Source: Macrostomum lignano (lineage: Eukaryota). From it: 25,974 nt of DNA. The translations under genes were made by a program, and so were the position numbers. The stretch spans positions 1 to 25,974 of the forward strand of contig NIVC01003995.1 of NCBI GenBank assembly GCA_002269645.1, in the 5' to 3' direction. A model generated the notes under the pieces. It did no database searches. It was not told where the DNA came from and was given only the letters and a program-made list of their open reading frames with translations. Shown one piece after another: positions 1-25,974 of the stretch (position 1 is the stretch's first letter; each line of letters begins with the position of its first letter).

Positions 1-53
1 TATATTTTTTCTATTGAGAGCCGTCAGGTGAGAGAGGTAACGATATTACAAGC

Positions 54-997
54 TGGGTGTCAGGATCAACAAACTGGTGTCAGGATCGACAAACTGGGTG
101 TCAGGATCGACAAAATGGGTGTCAGGATCGACAAACTGGGTGTCAGGATCGACAAACTGGGTGTCAGGATCGACAAACTAGGTATCAGAAAGATAGAACT
201 GGGTGACAGTAGGATCAAGCAAGGTGTCAGCAGGTTCAAGCAGGGTGTCAAGAGGATCAAGCAGGGTGTCAGGGGAGTCAAGCAGGGTGTCAGTAGGATC
301 AAGCAGGGTGTCAGTAGGATAAAGCAGGATGTCAGACGAGGAACAGAAGGGTGTCAGTAGGATAAAGCAGGATGTCAGACGAGGAACAGCACGGTGTCAG
401 TAGGATAAAGCAGGATGTCAGACGAGGAACAGCATGGTGTCAGTAGATATAAGCAGGATGTCAGACGAGGAACAGCATGGTGTCAGTAGGATAAAAGCAG
501 GATGTCAGACGAGGAACAGAAGGGTGTCAGTAGGATAAAGCAGGATGTCAGACGAGGAACAGAAGGGTGTCAGTAGGATAAAGCAGGATGTCAGACGAGG
601 AACAGCAGGGTGTCAGTAGGATATAAAGCAGGATGTCAGACGAGGAACAGCAGGGTGTCAGTAGGATAAAGCAGGAATGTCAGACGAGGAACAGCATGTG
701 TCAGTAGGATAAAGCAGGATGTCAGGCGAGGAACAGCAGGGTGTCAGTAGGATAAAGCAGGATGTCAGACGAGGAACAGAAGGGTGTCAGTAGGATAAAG
801 CAGGATGTCAGACGAGGAACAGCAGGGTGTCAGTAGGATAAAGCAGGATGTCAGACGAGGAACAGCATGGTGTCAGTAGGATAAAGCAGGATGTCAGACG
901 AGGAACAGCAGGGTGTCAGTAGGATAAAGCAGGATGTCAGACGAGGAACAGCATGGTGTCAGTAGGATAAAGCAGGATGTCAGACGAGGAACAGCAG
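54..997. repeat. Compound minisatellite: 21-bp units changing to a 43-bp dimeric unit
   Basis: gggtgtcaggatcgacaaact repeats, then gcagggtgtcaggaggatcaa-type units, then gcaggatgtcagacgaggaacagcagggtgtcagtaggataaa. Confidence 0.95.
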
Positions 998-1033
998 GCA
1001 TCAGAAGCGATAAAACCGCATACAAAGGCTCAC

Positions 1034-1487
1034 CTCGCAGGTCTGCAGGAACTCGGCCTCCCCAGCCAGCTGATCAACATCCGGCCGGCGACTCCTCGCC
1101 CCGGACGAACAGGCACGGCGTCTCCGAGCTGCCCGACGCCGAGGCCTCGCTGGCCAGCCAGTGCAGCCAGTCAACCAGCGTGTTCGCCTCCGGGTCTGCG
1201 GCCAGACCGTCGCGGGGCACGATGGCGCAGCCCAGCAGAGGCACCAGGCCGAAGGCGCAGCAGCAGGTGGCGCCGCGCTTGCAGGGAGGCGAGGCGCCAG
1301 CTGGCAGCGCCGTCGCAGTGGCATCGGCAGCTTCGCCGGCCGGCTGCCGATCCGACAGCAGGTTGGGCCGGAAGAGGCCGTTCACGAAGGCGGACTCGTT
1401 GTGCAGCGAAGCCATCGCTGCGTTAAACAAATCTAGCAGGGACTTGAGCTCCTGGCGGCGGAGCAGGGCCGCCAGGTGCACCATTTT
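1034..1487 (-). CDS. GH63-like gene exon 6, with an apparent +1 frameshift near 1082
   Basis: caccgcag|KMVHLAALL...AFGLVPLLGCAIV...DWLHWL... As written, TGA falls at 1074-1076. A second frame continues as DVDQLAGEAEFLQTCE|gtgag, with the donor at 1033. Confidence 0.75.
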
Positions 1488-4400
1488 CTGCGGTGAGGGA
1501 CGCCCAGTGAGAAAGTGATGTATCAGGCAGTTTGGCAGCCAGGTGAGCAGGTAAACAGGTGAACAAGTAGACAACAGGTGAAGAAGTGAAGAGGTAAAGA
1601 GTCGAACAGGTGAGAGTCGAACAGGTGGAGAGTCGAACAGGTGAACAGTGGAGAGTGGAACAGGTGGAGAGTCGAACAGGTGGAGAGTCGAACAGGTGGA
1701 GAGTCGAACAGGTGGAGAGTCGAACAGGTGGAGAGTCGAACAGGTGGAGAGTCGAACAGGCGGAGAATCGAACAGGTGGAGAGTCGAACAGGTGGAGAGT
1801 CGAACAGGTGAAGAGTCGAACAGGTGGAGAGTCGAACAGGTGGAGAGTCGAACAGGTGAAGAGTCGAACAGGTGGAGAGTCGAACAGGTGGAGAGTGGAA
1901 CAGGTGAAGAATCAAACAGGTGAAGAGTCGAACAGGTGGAGAGTCGAACAGGTGGAGAGTCGAACAGGTGGAGAGTGGAACAGGTGGAGAGTCGAACAGG
2001 TGGAGAGTGGAACAGGTGGAGAGTCGAACAGGTGAAGAGTCGAACAGGCGAAGAATCGAACAGGTGGAGAGTCGAACAGGTGGAGAGTGGAACAGGTGAA
2101 GAGTCGAACAGGTGGAGAGTCGAACAGGTGGAGAGTCGAACAGGTGAAGAGTCGAACAGGTGGAGAGTCGAACAGGTGGAGAGTGGAACAGGTGGAGAGT
2201 CGAACAGGTGGAGAGTGGAACAGGTGGAGAGTCGAACAGGTGGAGAGTCGAACAGGTGGAGAGTCGAACAGGCGGAGAATCGAACAGGTGGAGAGTCAAA
2301 CAAGTGGAGAGTCGAACAGGTGGAGAGTGGAACAGGTGGAGAGTCGAACAGGTGGAGATTCGAACAGGTGGAGAGTGGAACAGGCGGAGAATCGAACAGG
2401 TGGAGAGTGGAACAGGTGAAGAGTCGAACAGGTGAAGAGTCGAACAGGTGGAGAGTCGAACAGGTGGAGAGTCGAACAGGTGGAGAGTCGAACAGGTGGA
2501 GAGTGGAACAGGTGAAGAGTCGAACAGGTGGAGAGTCGAACAGGCGGAGAATCGAACAGGTGGAGAGTCGAACAGGTGGAGAGTCGAACAGGTGGAGAGT
2601 CGAACAGGTGGAGAGTCAAACAGTTGGAGAGTGGAACAGGTGGAGAGTCGAACAGGTGGAGAGTCGAACAGGTGGAGAGTCGAACAGGTGGAGAGTGGAA
2701 CAGGTGAAGAGTCGAACAGGTGAAGAGTCGAACAGGTGGAGAGTCGAACAGGTGGAGAGTCGAACAGGTGGAGAGTCGAACAGGTGGAGAGTCGAACAGG
2801 TGAAGAATCGAACAGGTGACCAGAAGGCACACATGAGCAGGTGTCCCTCAACTCACAGCGCAGAAGAAGCCGGACCAGACCAGCGAATCGTTGGACTCGC
2901 CGTCGTGCTCGGTGGCGTCCATCCAGCCGGCGTGTCGCAGGCCGAGGATTCCGCCGTCCAGGGTGCTGCGCTGGCCGGCATCTCGGCGCATCAGCAGCCA
3001 CCAGTGCAGGTGGCGCAGCAGGTCGCAGAATGTGGCGTTGGCCGCCTCCTGCTCGCTGTTGTGGCTGGGGAAACGGGCAAAGCCGATGGCGAGAGGACGG
3101 ATGACGTCATAGGGAACTCAAAGCCATAGGGGAGGATTGGTTAGGATCCGAAGAATTTATGAGGACCTGAGTGATTGGTGAGGACCTGAGTGATTGGTGA
3201 GGACCTGAGTGATTGGTGAGGACCTGAGTGATTGGTGAGGACCTGAGTGATTGGTGAGGACCTGAGTGAGAATTGGTGAGGACCTGAGTGATTGGTGAGG
3301 ACCTGAGTGATTGGTGAGGACCTGAGTGATTGGTGAGGACCTGAGTGATTGGTGAGGACCTGAGTGATTGGTGAGGACCTGAGTGATTGGTGAGGACCTG
3401 AGTGAGAATTGGTGAGGTCCTGAGTGAGAATTGGTGAGGTCCTGAGGGAGAATTGGTGAGGTCCTGAGGGAGAATTGGTGAGGTCCTGAGGGAGAATTGG
3501 TGAGGACCTGAGTGAAGATTGCCGAGGACCCGACGGACTCACCGCAGAAACTCCAGTAGGGCGAGCGGCCACACTGGCGGCTCCATGACCCCGCCGCCAC
3601 CGCCAGCGAGAATCTCGCCGCCTGCCGACATCCTGTCGAACTGGTGTCGCAGCTCCGCCAAGGCCAGCCGGCCGCTCACCCGGCACAGCGCGATCGCGTG
3701 CAGCCCGTGCTCCCAGCCGGCCGGCTCCGGCCGCGCCCACTTGTCCGGCACAATGGCCAGAATTGTCTTGGCCAGCTGCGTCAGAGACGGCGCTATCGAC
3801 ACCCTCACCGACACCGTCGCCGATGTCGATGTCAGCGGCTGCTGGCCGCACAGCTGGCGATTCCACAGCAGGCCGGAGAGGGCTCGGCGAATCAGCGAGC
3901 CGGTGCGGTGGTCGAACTCGACTCCGCACTCGGCCGGCCGAGTCAGCGAGTCGCTGGCCAGAGCCGCGGCCTGCGACATCAGCTGGGAGATCCGGGCTGG
4001 GGAGTCGGGGCCGGGGCTGCCGGCCGGGCTGAGCAGGAAGCTCAGGCTCTGGCTGCCGGCCGGAGCCAGCGGGAACCGGTAGATGAGGGCCACTCGGCAC
4101 CCGACGGTCTGATCTGAGCACAGCAGCGATGAGTCGCCGTGGACAATCAGCCGGTCCAGGGCCTGCGGGGGGCCACGCGTGAAGGTCACCTCAGATAATT
4201 AATTACTCACCCTCTGCAGGCAACGAGGGATTCACTCTCGCGAAGCCGCACACTGTGAACTCCCTGGCACTGGGGCTCTGAGCTCAGACAATCAGGCACC
4301 CCACTCTGACCTGAGGCTCAGCGCAGAAGACCACAGACTCCAGATGCTCAGACGGATAGTGCAGCTTCAAATTGTCAACGCGACGGCTGTCCTCGCCAGG

Positions 4401-6710
4401 CAGGTCGGTGTTCTCGGACTCGTGTCTGTCGGACAGGTAAACGCAGGCCTGGCCCCGGCAGCCGTCTGAGCTCAGGTGTTGAGGGAGGAGAGGGGGGCGC
4501 TTTTTGGAGCACTATTTTGAGCACTGTTTAGGGCAGTGTTTGGGGCACTGTTTAGGGCACTGTTTGGGGCACTGTTTAGGGCACTGTTTGGGGCACTGTT
4601 TAGGGCACTGTTTAGGGCACTGTTTAGACCAGTGTTTAGGGCACTGTTTTGGGCACTGTTTGGGGCACTGTTTAGGGCACTGTTTGGGGCACTGTTTGGG
4701 CACTGTTTAGGGCAGTGTTTGGGGCACTGTTTAGGGCACTGTTTGGGGCACTGTTTAGGGCACTGTTTGGGGCACTGTTTAGGGCACTGTTTAGGGCACT
4801 GTTTAGAGCAGTGTTTAGGGCACTGTTTTGGGCACTGTTTGGGGCACTGTTTAGGGCACTGTTTGGGGCACTGTTTGGGGCACTGTTTAGGGCAGTGTTT
4901 GGGGCACTGTTTAGGGCACTGTTTGGGGCACTGTTTAGGGCACTGTTTGGGGCACTGTTTAGGGCACTGTTTAGGGCACTGTTTAGAGCAGTGTTTAGGG
5001 CACTGTTTTGGGCACTGTTTGGGGCACTGTTTAGGGCACTGTTTGGGGCACTGTTTGGGGCACTGTTTAGGGCACTGTTTGGGGCACTGTTTAGGGCACT
5101 GTTTGGGGCACTGTTTGGGGCACTGTTTAGGGCACTGTTTAGAGCAGTGTTTAGGGCACTGTTTGGGGCACTGTTTGGGGCACTGTTTGGGGCACTGTTT
5201 GGGGCACTGTTTAGGGCACTGTTTAGAGCAGTGTTTAGGGCACTGTTTGGGGCACTGTTTGGGGCACTGTTTGGGGCACTGTTTGGGGCACTGTTTAGGG
5301 CACTGTTTAGGGCACTGTTTGGTGCACTGTTTGGGGCACTGTTTAGGGCAGTGTTTAGGGCACTGTATAGGGCACTGTTTGGGGCACTGTTTGGGGCACT
5401 GTTTAGGGCACTGTTTGGGGCACTGTTTGGGGCACTGTTTAGGGCACTGTTTAGAGCAGTGTTTAGGGCACTGTTTGGGGCACTGTTTAGAGCAGTGTTT
5501 AGGGCACTGTTTTGAGCACTGTTTAGGGCACTGTTTGGGGCACTGTTTAGGGCACTGTTTAGAGCAGTGTTTAGGGCACTGTTTGGGGCACTGTTTAGGG
5601 CACTGTTTGGGGCACTGTTTGGGGCACTGTTTAGGGCACTGTTTGGGGCACTGTTTGAGGCGCGTACTTACATTGATCTGTCATAGGTTGCTCAGAGTGA
5701 GCCTCTTAAATCTGTCAGTTAGTTATTAGTTGCTATCATAAAATACAAGCCGAACTGAACTCAATCTACAAGCCAAGCCAACGATACTACTGAATAATGA
5801 GTAGTTCAAGCGCTCACCGGCCATCCTCAGCCGGACGTAGCCGCCACCAGAAGCTTCGCCCTCTTCTTCGGCCAGCTGAACCCGCCCGCAGTCCGCGTGG
5901 CAAACCCACAGCTGAACCGCCACCGTCAGCTCCGCTGTTGACGCGGATGCTTCATCAGCTGAGGCCGGCTCCGCTGTGTCTTGAGTCTCCACAGTCAGCC
6001 TGCAGTAAATTCTGCTGGCGCTCTCCTTGGCCAGTTCGAACCGGATGTCAAATGGAGGACCGGAAGCCTGGGTTTTAACAATTTTTGGGACCGGAATTTA
6101 TCTCCGGATAAGTTGATAGACTGGGAAAGGCATATATTGAATGCGCCACAACTAGAATCAGACAGCGCCACAACTAGAATCAGACAGCGCCACAACTAGA
6201 ATCAGAAGACAGCGCCACAACTAGAATCAGACAGCGCCACAACTAGAATCAGAAGACAGCGCCACAACTAGAATCAGACAGAACCACAACTAGAATGAGA
6301 CAGCGCCACAACTAGAATCAGACAGCGCCACAACTAGAATCAGACAGCGCCACAACTAGAATCAGACAGCGCCACAACTAGAATCAGACAGCGCCACAAC
6401 TAGAATCAGAAGACAGCGCCACAACTTGTCATCATCAAGAGATCACCTGTCGGCAGTGGCACCTGCCGGCACAGTACCGGTACATCGGGTCAGCCAGTCC
6501 GGGCGCGAACTCGCACCCGCCGCCGGGCCCGGCCAGCGAGTTGGGCTGCAGCCGCGCCTTCGGCCGCCCGCCGCCGCCTGCCCAAGCAGAGATGGCCGCC
6601 CCGGCGGTGCCGCCCGAATTGCAGAAGCCGAAAATGCCGTCTCGATTGCAGAATTCCTCGAAGCCGAGCTCCGTAGCAACCTCGGGCAGGTACGGGCCCC
6701 AATGGTCCAT
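1034..6710 (-). CDS. Spliced gene encoding a divergent YMR196W-like / GH63-type glycoside hydrolase homologue. At least 6 exons; the 3' part probably lies beyond the window
   Basis: Phase-consistent GT-AG chain: 6710-6463, 5999-5818, 4465-4311, 4162-3543, 3064-2857, 1487-1034. Collinear motifs (HWGPYL, QLWVC, RRALSGLLWNRQ, PDKW..P..AGWE, PPVWP, WW...RRD.G.....GGILGL, FGLVPLL, GEAEFL) resemble the family consensus as I recall it. No database search was run. Confidence 0.8.
1549..2818. repeat. 16-bp minisatellite (aacaggtggagagtcg)
   Basis: About 79 tandem copies with point variants, filling the intron between exons 5 and 6 of the GH63-like gene. Confidence 0.97.
2857..3064 (-). CDS. GH63-like gene exon 5 (frame not in the ORF track)
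   Basis: ttccccag|HNSEQE...DLLRHLHWWLLMRRDAGQRSTLDGGILGLRHAGWMD...VWSGFFCA|gtgagt. 208 nt, phase 2/0. Confidence 0.85.
3158..3515. repeat. 19-bp minisatellite (ggtgaggacctgagtgatt)
   Basis: Tandem copies, some with 2-bp insertion variants. Confidence 0.95.
3543..4162 (-). CDS. GH63-like gene exon 4
   Basis: ccccgcag|ALDRLIVHG...RRALSGLLWNRQLC...IVPDKWARPEPAGWEHGLH...EPPVWPLALLEFL(CG)|gtgagt. 620 nt. Confidence 0.85.
4311..4465 (-). CDS. GH63-like gene exon 3 (not in the ORF track)
   Basis: ctcag|DGCRGQACVYLSDRHE...HLESVVFCAEPQ|gtcaga. 155 nt, phase 1/0, GC3-rich frame. Confidence 0.7.
4505..5658. repeat. 12-bp minisatellite (ggcactgttt[a/g]g)
   Basis: About 96 tandem copies. Confidence 0.97.
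5818..5999 (-). CDS. GH63-like gene exon 2
   Basis: ttactgcag|LTVETQD...LTVAVQLWVCHADCG...YVRLRMA(G)|gtgag. 182 nt, phase 2/1. Confidence 0.78.
6145..6425. repeat. 22/25-bp minisatellite (cagacagcgccacaactagaat)
   Basis: About 12 copies, some with an extra gaa. Confidence 0.95.
6463..6710 (-). CDS. GH63-like gene exon 1
   Basis: ATG at 6710 with an in-frame TAG just upstream. MDHWGPYLPEVATELGFEEFCNRDGIFGFCNSG...YRYCAG(AG)|gtgcca, phase 2. The donor is weak. Confidence 0.75.
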
Positions 6711-7039
6711 GCTGCGCCGCTAGGTGGACTCGGTCGAAAGCCTTCAGTACGAGTATCTGACAAGGGAGCTTTGCTAGGCTGCCGAGACACCTGACGCTAA
6801 ATGCTTAATGCAGAGTAGCTGTTTTGACATGGCGGCCTGGGCCATAGACAGCTGCTGTGGAATAAGTTGAGTCGTGACTAATTGCCAAGTTAACACCTCT
6901 TTAAAAAAAGTTAATTTTCACCATTTCACAAGTAGACTAAAAGTTGAACGACAATTTTACAACAGGAGCAATAAAAAATACCCACAACTAACAACCCACA
7001 TCCCACATCCTACATCTCAACTCTACATCCTACACCACA

Positions 7040-7560
7040 CATGTAATATCCCACACCCTATATCCCACACCCTAGATCTCACACCCTAGATCCCACACCC
7101 TATATCCCACACCCTATATCCCACACCCTATATCCCACACCCTATATCCCACACGCTATATGCCACACCCTAGATCCCACACCCTATATCCCACACCCTA
7201 GATCCCAAACCATAGATTCCACACCCTATATGCCACACCCTAGATCCCACACCCTATATCCCACACCCTATATGCCACACCCTAGATCCCACACCCTATA
7301 TCCCACACCCTATATGCCACACCCTAGATCCCACACCCTATATCCCACACCCTATATCCCACACCCTATATGCCACACCCTAGATCCCACACCCTATATC
7401 CCACACCCTATATGCCACACCCTACATCCCACACCCTAGATCCCACACCCTATATTCACACCCTATACTGTATGCCATACCCTATACCCCACACCCTATA
7501 TCCCACACCCTATTTCCCACACCCTAGATCTCCCACTCCAAGATCCCACACTCTACAGTG
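7040..7560. repeat. 14-bp minisatellite (tatcccacacccta), intergenic
   Basis: Tandem copies degenerating at both ends, about 330 nt upstream of ATG 6710. Confidence 0.93.
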
Positions 7561-8832
7561 TACACCCCACATCCAGAATCAACAGTTCAGACCTTCACTC
7601 CTTGACTAAGCATCCCTCAGAGTTACCTTGAGAGTCTTGTCTTGCAGGCTGAAGGCATGCAGGGAAAGCCAGCAAAGTAACCAACTGTAAAACATGATCA
7701 GTGTTTACGAAAAACTCAGAAAATAGTGCTTGCCGCATCCAACAGTTATATTTAATATTTGATTTCGAGTCCGGAGTCGAAAGGTTTTGAATGCAACGAA
7801 TCAGAAGCAACGTTATTTAAAACAAAATCTACGATTATAGAAAAAAAATCTTATTTATGCACGCATCTTCAATAGCATTTAGGAGTACCAATTAAAAATA
7901 TTTCACAAAATTCTTCGTGTTTCGAACACTACTGTCAGTAGATAGAATGCGCATCAGAAGAAATATAGATTTGCAAGGAACGCTAGAAGATTATGGACGG
8001 GAAATTTCGTCGCTGGTAAACTTTTTTAGACTCTCGCTTTCTAAGAATGCGAAATCTATCTGTTTCATATTTAATATAAGTCACTTTTTGACTGAGGCCG
8101 AGGAATGCCAACCTTTTAAACAAATTTCCAAGAAACCACTTTTCTCGCGTCTTTTTACATCTAGAAGCCCTAGTTTGATGGGACAGGTGTCAGAGCCGGA
8201 GGTGAGTTCAGATAAGCTCATTGAGTTGTGCTCAGAATGCGCATTGTGGACAGAGTCTATGAAAATACAGGCAAAAGAAAATAGGGGAGAAATCAAGAAC
8301 TCAAGAACAGTTGCAAGAGCTGGTTTACTTGGGCAGGCATAAGGTCTTCACGGGGCATTGACGAGAGTTTGAAGAATAAAAAAAGGCAGTTAAATTTCCG
8401 AATCGCATTGGCAGTGAAAGCTCGGGTGTCGGATCGCTTTGTGCAGTAGAATACCAAGAACACTTATAGTAAGCCAGAGGATACGCCACGAGACCAATAT
8501 ATGCAATTATGCTACTTCTGTTCAGTAGTATGCTTCACTTCACTTCTATTATTTGCTCCTTTCAGTGCGCCTTGGTTTACTTCAAAGTAATTTTCTTTTC
8601 ACCACTAAATTGTCATCAGCTCACACCCCGGGGAAAGTCAAGCCCTATGTACATATAAATGTACATTCTTGAATTCGCGGAGATTCGCTTCTTTATCGCC
8701 CCACAATCCGTCCAGCCAATAGCTACAAATTGCTCTGCGCTACGTACATCATCCACCAAGTCAAACAACTGTACATTATATAGCTTTACCGCCACTGCTA
8801 ACAAACTTGGCCTCGCTTTTGTCTTAACAACT

Positions 8833-8838
8833 TTTATT
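8833..8838 (-). terminator. Candidate polyadenylation signal (AATAAA) of Nav2
   Basis: tttatt on the plus strand, about 380 nt downstream of the stop codon. Motif match only. Confidence 0.4.
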
Positions 8839-9215
8839 TGCCTTTCCTCGCAGAAATAACCATCTGCTATCAACTAACTGCCTTGCTATCTTGAATTAGA
8901 GAGAGTAGGGACGCTGTCTGTAAAAGCTCGCTCACACCGCCATCAAATTTGGCCAGTCTCTGTGATCACGCACGTACGACTTACATTTTTTAATTTCTGT
9001 GTTCCTCCATCTGTCTTAATGCTCAACTGATGGCAGTGTGAGGCGACCCTTTGTGGCTCCCAGAGTCCCAGACAATGCATTGACACGGGCAGACAGAGTC
9101 AGAGGATTCAGAAGTACATGTACAAAGAGTTACGTAGCAATTCACGCGATCAAACTGCCGATACCAATAGCCATGCAGGTGAGTTTCACGGGTTTAATCA
9201 AATGGGATTGGGGGT

Positions 9216-25349
<16,134 letters not shown>

Positions 25350-25436
25350 GCCTGTCTGCTTGATGGACGGGTCGGGTGCTGCGAATGCTGGTTCCGGGAA
25401 TTCGCTTGCAGATAATAGCTATGATTGCCACGCCTC

Positions 25437-25974
25437 AAGCATGTCCCTACTCAAGCATATCCCTACTCAAGCATATCCCTACTCAAGCATATCCCTACTC
25501 AAGCATATCCCTACTCAAGCATATCCCTACTCAAGCATATCCCTACTCAAGCATATCCCTACTCAAGCATATCCCTACTCAAGCATATCCCTACTCAAGC
25601 ATATCCCTACTCAAGCATATCCCTACTCAAGCATATCCCTACTCAAGCATATCCCTACTCAAGCATATCCCTACTCAAGCATATCCCTACTCAAGCATAT
25701 CCCTACTCAAGCATATCCCTACTCAAGCATATCCCTACTCAAGCATATCCCTACTCAAGCATATCCCTACTCAAGCATATCCCTACTCAAGCATATCCCT
25801 ACTCAAGCATATCCCTACTCAAGCATATCCCTACTCAAGCATATCCCTACTCAAGCATATCCCTACTCAAGCATATCCCTACTCAAGCATATCCCTACTC
25901 AAGCATATCCCTACTCAAGCATATCCCTACTCAAGCATATCCCTACTCAAGCATATCCCTACTCAAGCATATCC
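25437..25974. repeat. 16-bp minisatellite (atccctactcaagcat)
   Basis: At least 33 perfect copies running off the window end. Confidence 0.98.

What the first reader, a model, noticed from the sequence alone, without database searches (positions are those of the whole stretch)
1034..6710. Intron-containing animal homologue of a bacterial/fungal YMR196W-like GH63 glycosidase
Seen: six phase-compatible exons that the ORF track hides. From memory of the family consensus, the motifs match in order. HWGPYL ~ WGPYLSERQW. RDGIFGFCN ~ EDGIAGISD. VQLWVCH ~ PQLWFRN. IRRALSGLLWNRQLC (3848-3889) ~ QRQAFAGMLWSKQFY. IVPDKWARPEPAGWEHGLH (from about 3754) ~ SMPDKWEYPWFAAWDLAFH. EPPVWP ~ NPPVHA. HWWLLMRRDAG..TLDGGILGL ~ TWWVNRKDAEG.NVFEGGFLGL. 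FGLVPLL ~ VGLIPLF. GEAEFL ~ DENEFL. To my knowledge this family is mainly bacterial and fungal, with patchy presence in animals. Inference: an old horizontal acquisition or a patchily retained gene that now has spliceosomal introns, host-like codon usage and minisatellite-filled introns.
Basis: partly seen in the sequence, partly recalled or inferred. Interest (0 to 1): 0.8.

Follow-up and report, generated by a model that had tools for sequence, protein, structure and literature searches.

The report
Diverged flatworm GH63-like glycosidase paralogue
The region holds the first six exons of a Macrostomum lignano (flatworm) gene that is a fast-evolving, probably non-catalytic duplicate of the animal's own YMR196W-like GH63 glycosidase gene, so it looks like an ordinary lineage-specific paralogue and not a gene transferred from bacteria or fungi.

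Summary
Window 6710..1034 (minus strand) carries six GT-AG, phase-compatible exons. Spliced, they are 100% identical to GenBank BOX15_Mlig023767g3 (Macrostomum lignano, "hypothetical protein, partial"). The window is the first 25,974 nt of contig NIVC01003995.1. The contig end cuts off exons 7-8, which are present in the intact inverted copy g4 (847 aa) on the same contig.

Homology to the YMR196W/MGH1-like branch of GH63 is real but remote. There is no Pfam hit. HMMER gives E 1e-9 to 1e-14, hhalign gives 96%, and the AlphaFold model matches GH63 glucosidase I at E 1e-16.

The transfer reading is not supported. YMR196W-like genes occur in cnidarians, echinoderms, hemichordates, amphioxus, tunicates, molluscs and an acanthocephalan. 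M. lignano also has a less diverged copy, Mlig024102. The window gene shares at least three exact intron positions and phases with that copy and pairs with it in 99.5% of NJ bootstraps.

The window gene has lost the general-acid Asp (Arg473), changed the subsite Asp to Glu374 and lost the NSNWRG loop. It keeps only 75 of 183 family-conserved positions, so it is probably not a canonical hydrolase. Copy g3 also has two 1-nt deletions near the contig end. Interest is modest.

The parts
6447..6710 (-). Exon 1 (264 nt, ATG at 6710; carries WGPYL and DGIFG motifs)
   Evidence: donor CAG|gtgatc. 100% match to P0001 residues 1-88.
6068..6446 (-). Intron 1 (379 nt) with a 22-nt minisatellite x12.5 at 6143-6426
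   Evidence: The same intron is 354 nt in copy g4.
5818..6067 (-). Exon 2 (250 nt; N-terminal beta-sandwich, VQLWVCH motif)
4466..5817 (-). Intron 2 (1352 nt) with a 12-nt minisatellite x96 at 4509-5656
   Evidence: 1497 nt in g4.
4311..4465 (-). Exon 3 (155 nt)
4163..4310 (-). Intron 3 (148 nt, no tandem repeat)
   Evidence: Models that used the candidate mini-exon at 4277-4211 broke the reading frame.
3543..4162 (-). Exon 4 (620 nt; LLWNRQ, PDKW...GWEHGLH and EPPVWP motifs, start of the (alpha/alpha)6 barrel). The intron after it (phase 2) sits at the same position as one in paralogue Mlig024102.
3710..3712 (-). Codon Glu374. It replaces the family's nearly invariant subsite Asp (WD motif; Asp43 of MhGgH).
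   Evidence: The D43A variant of MhGgH showed no detectable activity (PMC6608630).
3065..3542 (-). Intron 4 (478 nt) with a 19-nt minisatellite x18 at 3160-3515
2857..3064 (-). Exon 5 (208 nt; HWWLLMRRDA and LDGGILGLRH motifs). The intron after it (phase 0) is shared with Mlig024102.
   Evidence: The acceptor is tttccccag|CCACAAC, not the upstream AG at 3117-3118.
2935..2937 (-). Codon Arg473, at the position of the general-acid Asp (GLD motif; Asp182 of MhGgH)
   Evidence: 66 of 67 other family members have Asp here, and Mlig024102 has Asp568.
1488..2856 (-). Intron 5 (1369 nt) with a 16-nt minisatellite x77 at 1573-2818
1034..1487 (-). Exon 6 (454 nt here, 456 nt in g4; FGLVPLL motif). Two single-G deletions, between 1088/1087 and 1064/1063, shift the frame. 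The GenBank CDS stops at 1089. The donor after 1034 (phase 0) is shared with Mlig024102.
1..1033 (-). 5' part of intron 6 (43-nt x18 and 21-nt x7 minisatellites), cut by the start of contig NIVC01003995.1. Exons 7-8 are missing from this copy.
   Evidence: Window position 1 corresponds to about 32 nt before exon 7 in the g4 arm.

Best explanation
Window 6710..1 (minus strand) is the 5' three quarters (exons 1-6 of 8) of Mlig023767g3. This is one of several near-identical copies of a Macrostomum lignano gene for a cytosolic-type, two-domain GH63-fold protein: an N-terminal beta-sandwich followed by an (alpha/alpha)6 barrel.

Shown: the gene arose by duplication of the flatworm's own YMR196W/MGH1-like GH63 gene (Mlig024102), after that gene had acquired its present introns. 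It then diverged very fast and became GC-rich and rich in Gly/Ala/Arg/Pro.

Inferred: it keeps the fold and the general-base Glu (E760, seen in copy g4). It has lost the general-acid Asp (now Arg473), changed the sugar-binding Asp to Glu374 and deleted the NSNWRG substrate loop. It therefore most likely no longer works as a canonical inverting alpha-glycosidase. It would survive either as a non-catalytic, possibly sugar-binding, paralogue or with a changed chemistry.

The copy in the window is truncated by the contig end and carries two 1-nt deletions. These are either consensus errors or recent inactivation of this copy.
For: Identity and locus.

Family homology. phmmer gives E 1.3e-9 and 1.1e-4 to proteins carrying PF22422 and PF03200. 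BLASTP to P0006 gives 2e-15 over 395 aa. The exhaustive profile search gives E 3e-14 to 4e-11 for the best hits outside the window family, and all ten best of these carry PF22422. hhalign gives 96% probability over 448 columns. The family profile hits the GH63 structures 4J5T, 5MHF, 2Z07, 5OHC and 3W7X. The AF2 model has pTM 0.81, and its best PDB matches are GH63 glucosidase I (E 1e-16, TM 0.5-0.6) and then YgjK.

Paralogy. Intron positions and phases are identical at alignment columns 714 (phase 2), 796 (phase 0) and 1038/1039 (phase 0). A further phase-1 intron lies within 2 residues next to an indel. The two genes share derived motifs: LLWNRQ, HL.WWL.RRDA, DGGI.G and L.W..FF. The NJ pair has 99.5% bootstrap support.

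Erosion of the active site. Of 183 columns that are at least 90% conserved, the window gene keeps 75 and Mlig024102 keeps 123. The changes include D->E374, D->R473 and deletion of NSNWRG. The D43A, D182A and E419A variants of that enzyme showed no detectable activity (PMC6608630).

A real, expressed host gene. The annotation is RNA-seq-based. The intact 847-codon copy g4 has 8 exons. The flanking gene is a voltage-gated channel. GC3 matches the neighbouring gene.
Against: No enzymology or 3-D active-site inspection was possible, so loss of activity is inferred from alignment only. At about 23% identity, single alignment columns could be shifted, although the GGxLGL(D/R) block is unambiguous. 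Selection could not be measured: g3 and g4 differ by one substitution, and no DNA was available for the more diverged copies. Neutral decay of a young family is therefore not excluded. NJ grouping of two very long branches could be long-branch attraction, although the intron evidence is independent of it. The AF2 model was built with an alignment of family members, so its fold is partly inherited from them. No intron position is shared with Saccoglossus, so vertical descent of the two Macrostomum genes from the metazoan ancestor is the parsimonious view and is not demonstrated.
Confidence: 0.62

Rival explanations
1. It is still an active glycoside hydrolase or transglycosidase. Another carboxylate (Glu374, Asp479 or a residue from a remodelled loop) would take over the acid role, with a new substrate specificity.
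For: The general-base Glu760 and the downstream GRG...TGW motif are kept. Copy g4 keeps an intact 847-codon ORF. The barrel core residues (W, G, P) are preferentially retained.
Against: The acid Asp is Asp in 66 of 67 other family members and is replaced here by a basic Arg. The loop aligned to the conserved WRGP motif of MhGgH, where the paper's substrate-binding Tyr375/Trp376 lie, is deleted. Only 41% of family-conserved positions remain. The D182A variant of MhGgH showed no detectable activity (PMC6608630).
Confidence: 0.18
2. The Mlig023767 copies are a decaying, still transcribed pseudogene family with no function. The copy in the window is one dead member.
For: g3 has two frameshifting 1-nt deletions, and g5 (P0201) has one of the two. 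Divergence is extreme and composition is GC-driven: GARP 33%, GC1 0.68. Catalytic residues are lost.
Against: g4 has an uninterrupted 847-codon ORF over 8 exons with all splice sites intact. At about 23% identity to its paralogue, a neutral sequence would have accumulated stops. The deletions are single G's in G/C runs within about 1.1 kb of a contig end in a long-read assembly. Three independent gene models from the older assembly read through in frame (P0002-P0004). Fold-defining residues are retained above background.
Confidence: 0.12
3. One reading: the GH63-like gene(s) of Macrostomum entered by horizontal transfer from a bacterium or fungus and later gained introns. In that case both Mlig024102 and Mlig023767 would descend from the transferred gene.
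For: Mlig024102 is no closer to other animals (29-31%) than to bacteria (30-33%). No other flatworm homologue appeared in the searches. No intron position is shared with Saccoglossus. The position of the Macrostomum pair in the tree is unresolved.
Against: The family is present in at least seven other animal phyla or subphyla, including the spiralians Pinctada, Mytilus and Pomphorhynchus. Fifteen of these animal sequences cluster together, though weakly at 54%. The Macrostomum pair never nests in a specific bacterial group; its most frequent neighbours are Pomphorhynchus and Thecamonas. The equal distance to everything is what a fast-evolving lineage gives.
Confidence: 0.08

Closest known systems
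YMR196W-like / MGH1-like GH63 proteins (Pfam PF22422 + PF03200), about 900 aa, annotated 'glucosidase' in bacteria and 'uncharacterized protein YMR196W-like' in animals
   Same: The order of motifs is the same from WGPYL to TGW. The two-domain architecture is the same and there is no obvious signal peptide. Homology is significant by HMMER, hhalign and Foldseek.
   Different: Identity is only about 23%, and no Pfam model reaches even E<=1. The N-terminal domain is shortened: 3 residues precede WGPYL, and the SERQWGTVREDY and NHGEDVKE blocks are lost. The acid Asp is Arg, the WD Asp is Glu and NSNWRG is deleted.
Mlig024102 / Mlig021567 (PAA63037.1 etc.; UniProt A0A1I8JB63 'Glucosidase'), the canonical YMR196W-like gene of M. 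lignano
   Same: It is the closest relative outside the window family's own copies (E 3e-14). It shares at least three exact intron positions and phases and several derived motifs, and pairs with the window gene in 99.5% of NJ bootstraps.
   Different: It keeps Asp466, Asp568 and Glu966 and a NTNWYG loop, and 123 of 183 conserved positions. Its GC3 is 0.62 against 0.83. It is 999 aa against 847 aa.
Characterised GH63 enzymes: processing alpha-glucosidase I (Cwh41/MOGS; 4J5T, 5MHF), E. coli YgjK (3W7S), Thermus MgH (2Z07/4WVA), Mycolicibacterium GgH (5OHC)
   Same: They share the fold: the best Foldseek hits have E 1e-16 to 1e-12. The catalytic-base Glu region (YE...G.G...TGW) is conserved.
   Different: These are inverting hydrolases that use an Asp acid and a Glu base (PMC6608630). 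The window protein lacks the Asp. It has no ER-targeting or membrane anchor like glucosidase I and no cap domain like MgH/GgH.

Membership tests
GH63, YMR196W/MGH1-like subfamily | Statistically significant sequence homology to family members | tested here: met
   E 1.3e-9. E 3.9e-13 to Thecamonas and 3.6e-11 to Pomphorhynchus proteins that carry PF22422 and PF03200. hhalign 96%, E 4.9e-9.
GH63, YMR196W/MGH1-like subfamily | Match to the curated Pfam models PF22422 / PF03200 above the gathering score | tested here: not met
   No hit for separate exons, the spliced model, P0001, P0002 or the full-length P0200. Even the canonical paralogue P0074 is below the cut-off: 24.2 against 27 bits.
GH63, YMR196W/MGH1-like subfamily | N-terminal beta-sandwich plus (alpha/alpha)6-barrel fold | tested here: met
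   The AF2 model of g4 has pLDDT 71.7 and pTM 0.81. The top 23 PDB matches are all GH63. Caveat: the alignment used for the model consisted of family members.
GH63, YMR196W/MGH1-like subfamily | General-acid Asp (G-x-D; Asp182 of MhGgH) | tested here: not met
   Arg473 (window 2937-2935) sits in a column where 66 of 67 others have Asp.
GH63, YMR196W/MGH1-like subfamily | General-base Glu ((F/Y)-E-x-(F/Y); Glu419 of MhGgH) | tested here: met
   Glu760 is present in copies g4 and P0002. The codon lies in exon 8, which is not in the window.
GH63, YMR196W/MGH1-like subfamily | Sugar-binding subsite residues: the W-D Asp (Asp43) and the NSNWRGP loop (Tyr375/Trp376 region) | tested here: not met
   The Asp is Glu374. 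NSNWRG is a gap in Mlig023767.
GH63, YMR196W/MGH1-like subfamily | Alpha-glycosidase activity | not testable with these tools
   This needs recombinant protein and substrate assays.
Horizontally acquired gene in an animal | Absent from related animal lineages | tested here: not met
   Named orthologues occur in Cnidaria, Echinodermata, Hemichordata, Cephalochordata, Tunicata, Mollusca and Acanthocephala. A coral orthologue is described in PMC10584924.
Horizontally acquired gene in an animal | Nested within a donor (bacterial or fungal) clade in a phylogeny | tested here: inconclusive
   The NJ tree places the Macrostomum pair on a long branch near Pomphorhynchus and Thecamonas with under 50% support. 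It never falls inside a particular bacterial group. No fungal sequences were available.
Lineage-specific paralogue (duplicate of Mlig024102) | Shared intron positions and phases, and sister grouping | tested here: met
   Three exact and one near-exact shared introns out of the 5 in Mlig024102. Bootstrap support 99.5%.
Pseudogene (copy g3 in the window) | Disrupted reading frame | tested here: inconclusive
   There are two 1-nt G deletions in exon 6 relative to g4. They lie in G/C runs about 1.1 kb from a contig end of a long-read assembly, and no reads were available to check them.

The most novel reading that the evidence does not exclude
Mlig023767 is a selectively maintained, non-hydrolytic GH63-fold protein: a 'dead' glycosidase with Arg in place of the acid catalyst, recruited in the Macrostomum lineage for sugar binding or a regulatory role. 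As far as I know it would be the first pseudoenzyme described in the YMR196W-like branch of GH63, a branch whose function in eukaryotes is itself unknown.
Probability: 0.3. Interest if true: 0.45.

Novelty: new member of a known kind. Interest (0 to 1): 0.3.

Why it matters
It matters mainly as a correction. A candidate bacteria/fungus-to-animal transfer turns out to be a fast-evolving duplicate of a gene family that many invertebrate phyla carry and that NCBI already labels 'YMR196W-like'.

Three smaller points remain useful. First, the GenBank 'hypothetical protein' Mlig023767 and several misnamed UniProt entries (APC1, HECT, DUF4206) can now be annotated as diverged GH63-like proteins that Pfam misses. 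Second, the pair Mlig024102/Mlig023767 offers a natural comparison of an intact and an eroded active site in a family with no known eukaryotic function, in an animal where RNAi and transgenesis exist. Third, it illustrates how GC-biased, rapid divergence in M. lignano can hide homology from standard domain searches.

Tried and rejected
1. Pfam gave nothing on single exons, the concatenated model or the full-length proteins. phmmer of the spliced model against PDB also gave nothing. Homology only appeared through the large-database searches and profiles.

2. I tested gene models that used a candidate 67-nt mini-exon (4277-4211), an alternative exon-4 acceptor (4189), or the upstream exon-5 acceptor (3116). 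The mini-exon and 3116 models break the reading frame; the 4189 model adds nine residues that the transcript-based GenBank model lacks. All were rejected.

3. dN/dS between copies was not possible. g3 and g4 differ by one substitution, and the more diverged copies exist only as UniProt proteins without DNA.

4. I looked for shared introns with Saccoglossus as evidence of vertical descent. None coincide exactly. Two phase-1 introns lie 6-8 columns apart in gappy regions, and I did not count them.

5. I could not compare directly with yeast Ymr196w or include fungal or choanoflagellate sequences, because the capped searches returned none by name.

6. The literature held nothing on 'YMR196W-like' or 'MGH1-like', and nothing on horizontal transfer of this gene in Macrostomum.

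7. I considered contamination as the source of a 'bacterial-like' gene and rejected it. The gene has host-type introns and minisatellites, a four-domain ion-channel neighbour and several genomic copies in two assemblies.
Full report
**What is there.** I read the minus strand between 6710 and 1034 and found six open segments bounded by consensus splice sites. The only combination that keeps one reading frame is:
- exons 6710-6447, 6067-5818, 4465-4311, 4162-3543, 3064-2857 and 1487-1034
- start phases 0, 0, 1, 0, 2, 0
- all donors GT and all acceptors AG

Its translation is identical over 632 residues to GenBank PAA49022.1, 'hypothetical protein BOX15_Mlig023767g3, partial' of the free-living flatworm Macrostomum lignano. 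The look-up of that protein shows that the window is the first 25,974 nt of contig NIVC01003995.1 (66,034 nt) of assembly GCA_002269645.1. That annotation was derived from RNA-seq-guided transcript assemblies (PMC5730564). The exon junctions that I derived from sequence alone therefore coincide with a transcript-based model.

Introns 1, 2, 4, 5 and 6 are each filled by a different minisatellite, with 22-, 12-, 19-, 16- and 43/21-nt units. Intron 3 (148 nt) has none. CDS GC3 is 0.83, like the exons of the neighbouring gene at 0.71-0.92.

**What the window does not contain.** A second copy, g4 (PAA49024.1, 847 aa), lies on the same contig at 48.7-57.4 kb in the opposite orientation. I mapped it exactly: it has 8 exons, and the first six have the same lengths and junctions as in the window. 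The window copy stops in intron 6 because the contig starts there. Window position 1 corresponds to about 32 nt before exon 7.

Against g4, the window copy has one substitution (T13A) and two single-G deletions in exon 6, between 1088/1087 and 1064/1063. These shift the frame twice, and this is why the GenBank CDS is 'partial' and ends at 1089. Three gene models from the older assembly read through in frame, and copy g5 shows only the second deletion. The deletions sit in G/C runs about 1.1 kb from the end of a long-read contig. I cannot tell consensus error from real inactivation without the reads.

**Is it GH63-like?** Curated models say nothing. No Pfam family reaches E<=1 for the exons, the spliced model, P0001, P0002 or the full-length g4 protein, and phmmer against PDB is empty. 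Large-scale searches give a consistent signal:
- E 1.3e-9 and 1.1e-4 to two metagenomic proteins that carry PF22422 (MGH1-like_GH) and PF03200 (Glyco_hydro_63).
- BLASTP 2e-15 over 395 residues, running from HWW..RRDA to the C-terminal TGW motif.
- In an exhaustive HMMER scan of 1.84e9 representatives, 70 hits at E<=1e-3. The ten best outside the window family all carry PF22422.
- Profile-profile comparison with 30 family members from other organisms: 96% probability over 448 columns.
- The family profile detects the solved GH63 enzymes: yeast and mouse glucosidase I, Thermus MgH, Mycolicibacterium GgH and E. coli YgjK.
- An AlphaFold2 model of g4 (pTM 0.81) finds GH63 glucosidase I and then YgjK as its best 23 PDB matches, at E 1e-16 to 6e-12.

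The ninth (GEAEFL~DENEFL) is wrong: the true counterpart is DPAHFLSPHG in exon 7.

**Where it comes from.** The best hit outside the window family's own copies is another M. lignano protein cluster, Mlig024102/Mlig021567 (UniProt 'Glucosidase', 967-999 aa). Next come Thecamonas trahens and the acanthocephalan Pomphorhynchus laevis. I fetched the Mlig024102g2 locus and mapped its six exons.

In a 13-sequence alignment, three of its five introns fall in exactly the same column and phase as introns 4, 5 and 6 of the window gene: column 714 phase 2, column 796 phase 0 and column 1038/1039 phase 0. Its last intron (phase 1) lies within two residues of intron 7 of g4, next to an indel. The two proteins also share derived motifs not seen in other members: LLWNRQ, HL.WWL.RRDA, DGGI.G, L.W..FF, and the deletion of the WLxGDP segment. 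They pair in 99.5% of NJ bootstraps. The window gene is therefore a duplicate of the flatworm's own intron-bearing gene.

**Is the family rare in animals?** It is not. A search with the Saccoglossus protein returns named orthologues at 44-60% identity from these groups:
- hemichordates: Glandiceps, Ptychodera
- amphioxus
- echinoderms: Lytechinus, Antedon
- tunicates: Ciona, Phallusia, Styela, Clavelina
- cnidarians: Nematostella, Oculina
- molluscs: Pinctada, Mytilus

Several are labelled 'YMR196W-like' by their sources. A coral orthologue has been discussed in print (PMC10584924). In the NJ tree these 15 animal sequences cluster with 54% support. The position of the long Macrostomum branch is unresolved; its most frequent neighbours are Pomphorhynchus and Thecamonas, and it never falls in a specific bacterial group.

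Mlig024102 is about 30% identical to animals and bacteria alike, as expected for a fast lineage. No intron is shared with Saccoglossus, so vertical descent is the parsimonious reading and is not proven. I put transfer into the Macrostomum lineage at under 10%. The presence of a metazoan four-domain voltage-gated channel gene 2.5 kb upstream on the same strand excludes contamination.

**How it probably works.** HMM alignment of the family to MhGgH maps its residues as follows:
- Asp43 maps to the family WD motif.
- The general acid Asp182 maps to GLD.
- The general base Glu419 maps to (F/Y)YE(Y/H)F.

The D43A, D182A and E419A variants of MhGgH showed no detectable activity (PMC6608630). Mlig024102 keeps all three (D466, D568, E966). 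The window gene has Glu374 (3712-3710), Arg473 (2937-2935) and, in g4, Glu760. It lacks the NSNWRG loop. That loop aligns with the WRGP segment of MhGgH, the region of the paper's substrate-binding Tyr375/Trp376.

Of 183 columns that are at least 90% conserved in 67 other members, it keeps 75, against 123 for Mlig024102. Its N-terminal domain is shortened, and its composition is strongly GC-driven: Gly+Ala+Arg+Pro is 33% and FYMINK is 14%. My best reading is a protein that keeps the GH63 fold but is no longer a canonical inverting glycosidase. That step is inference from alignment, not measurement.

The intact 847-codon, 8-exon ORF of g4 argues against simple decay, given only about 23% identity to its paralogue. 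Selection could not be quantified.

**Verdict.** The sequence observation is correct and the family assignment is correct, although the gene sits at the edge of the family and fails the Pfam thresholds. The evolutionary interpretation (transfer, or a rare relic) is not supported. This is a lineage-specific, rapidly diverging and probably catalytically disabled paralogue of a gene that is widespread in invertebrates, caught as a truncated copy at a contig end. Interest is modest. The useful outputs are the annotation and the intact-versus-eroded paralogue pair.

Noticed in passing
window 9216-25431, minus strand: A multi-exon gene for a four-domain voltage-gated cation channel fills most of the rest of the window. 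Its ORFs match PF00520 Ion_trans. The pore motifs are DFWEN, GEWIE and TSAGWD; that these are typical of sodium channels is from my own recollection. Its 3' end lies about 2.5 kb upstream of the GH63-like gene on the same strand. The mirror copy on the g4 arm is annotated with a 1514-aa product.
   Followed up: partly
whole contig NIVC01003995.1; window 1-9559 against L004 1-9858: The contig is a large inverted duplication: [g3 <-][channel <-] ... [channel ->][g4 ->], with its centre near 27.7 kb, just beyond the window end. The arms are 93-98% identical. They differ mostly in minisatellite copy number, while the exons are 99.9% identical. It could be a real inverted segmental duplication or a palindromic long-read assembly artefact.
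   Followed up: partly
window 1063-1088: Two single-G deletions relative to copy g4 shift the frame of exon 6 twice (frame 0 -> 2 -> 1). Copy g5 on another contig shows only the second one, in a G5 run. This pattern suggests homopolymer consensus errors, but it could be real.
   Followed up: partly
window, all introns and spacers, e.g. 218-998, 1573-2818, 4509-5656, 7046-7555, 10863-12063, 13287-14359, 21969-22870, 25434-25974: Almost every intron and spacer of both genes holds its own unrelated mini- or microsatellite array: 4- to 55-nt units, up to 268 copies of ATCT. Array lengths differ between the two arms of the contig. The genome paper reports simple and tandem repeats as 15% of the assembly.
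   Followed up: partly
Mlig023767 CDS (window exons) against Mlig024102 (L002): The diverged paralogue is much more GC-rich at all codon positions (GC1/2/3 of 0.68/0.54/0.83 against 0.53/0.43/0.62). Its protein is enriched in Gly/Ala/Arg/Pro (33% against 24%) and Cys (3.7%). This suggests that GC-biased substitution contributed to its rapid divergence.
   Followed up: no
UniProt entries A0A1I8HQ96, A0A1I8IDG4, A0A1I8JS5.., A0A1I8F5K0, A0A1I8IBZ1 (P0002-P0005, P0204): Gene models of this family from the older assembly are named 'Anaphase-promoting complex subunit 1', 'HECT domain-containing', 'DUF4206 domain-containing' and 'Glyco_hydro_15 domain-containing'. P0003 to P0005 contain out-of-frame stretches or fused C-terminal extensions, so they look like chimeric or frameshifted predictions.
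   Followed up: partly
family-wide: Animal YMR196W-like proteins are about 50% identical to planctomycete, verrucomicrobial and myxobacterial 'glucosidases'. This is as close as they are to animals of other phyla. The cause could be strong conservation or an ancient inter-domain transfer at the base of the eukaryotic or animal lineage. It was not resolved here.
   Followed up: no
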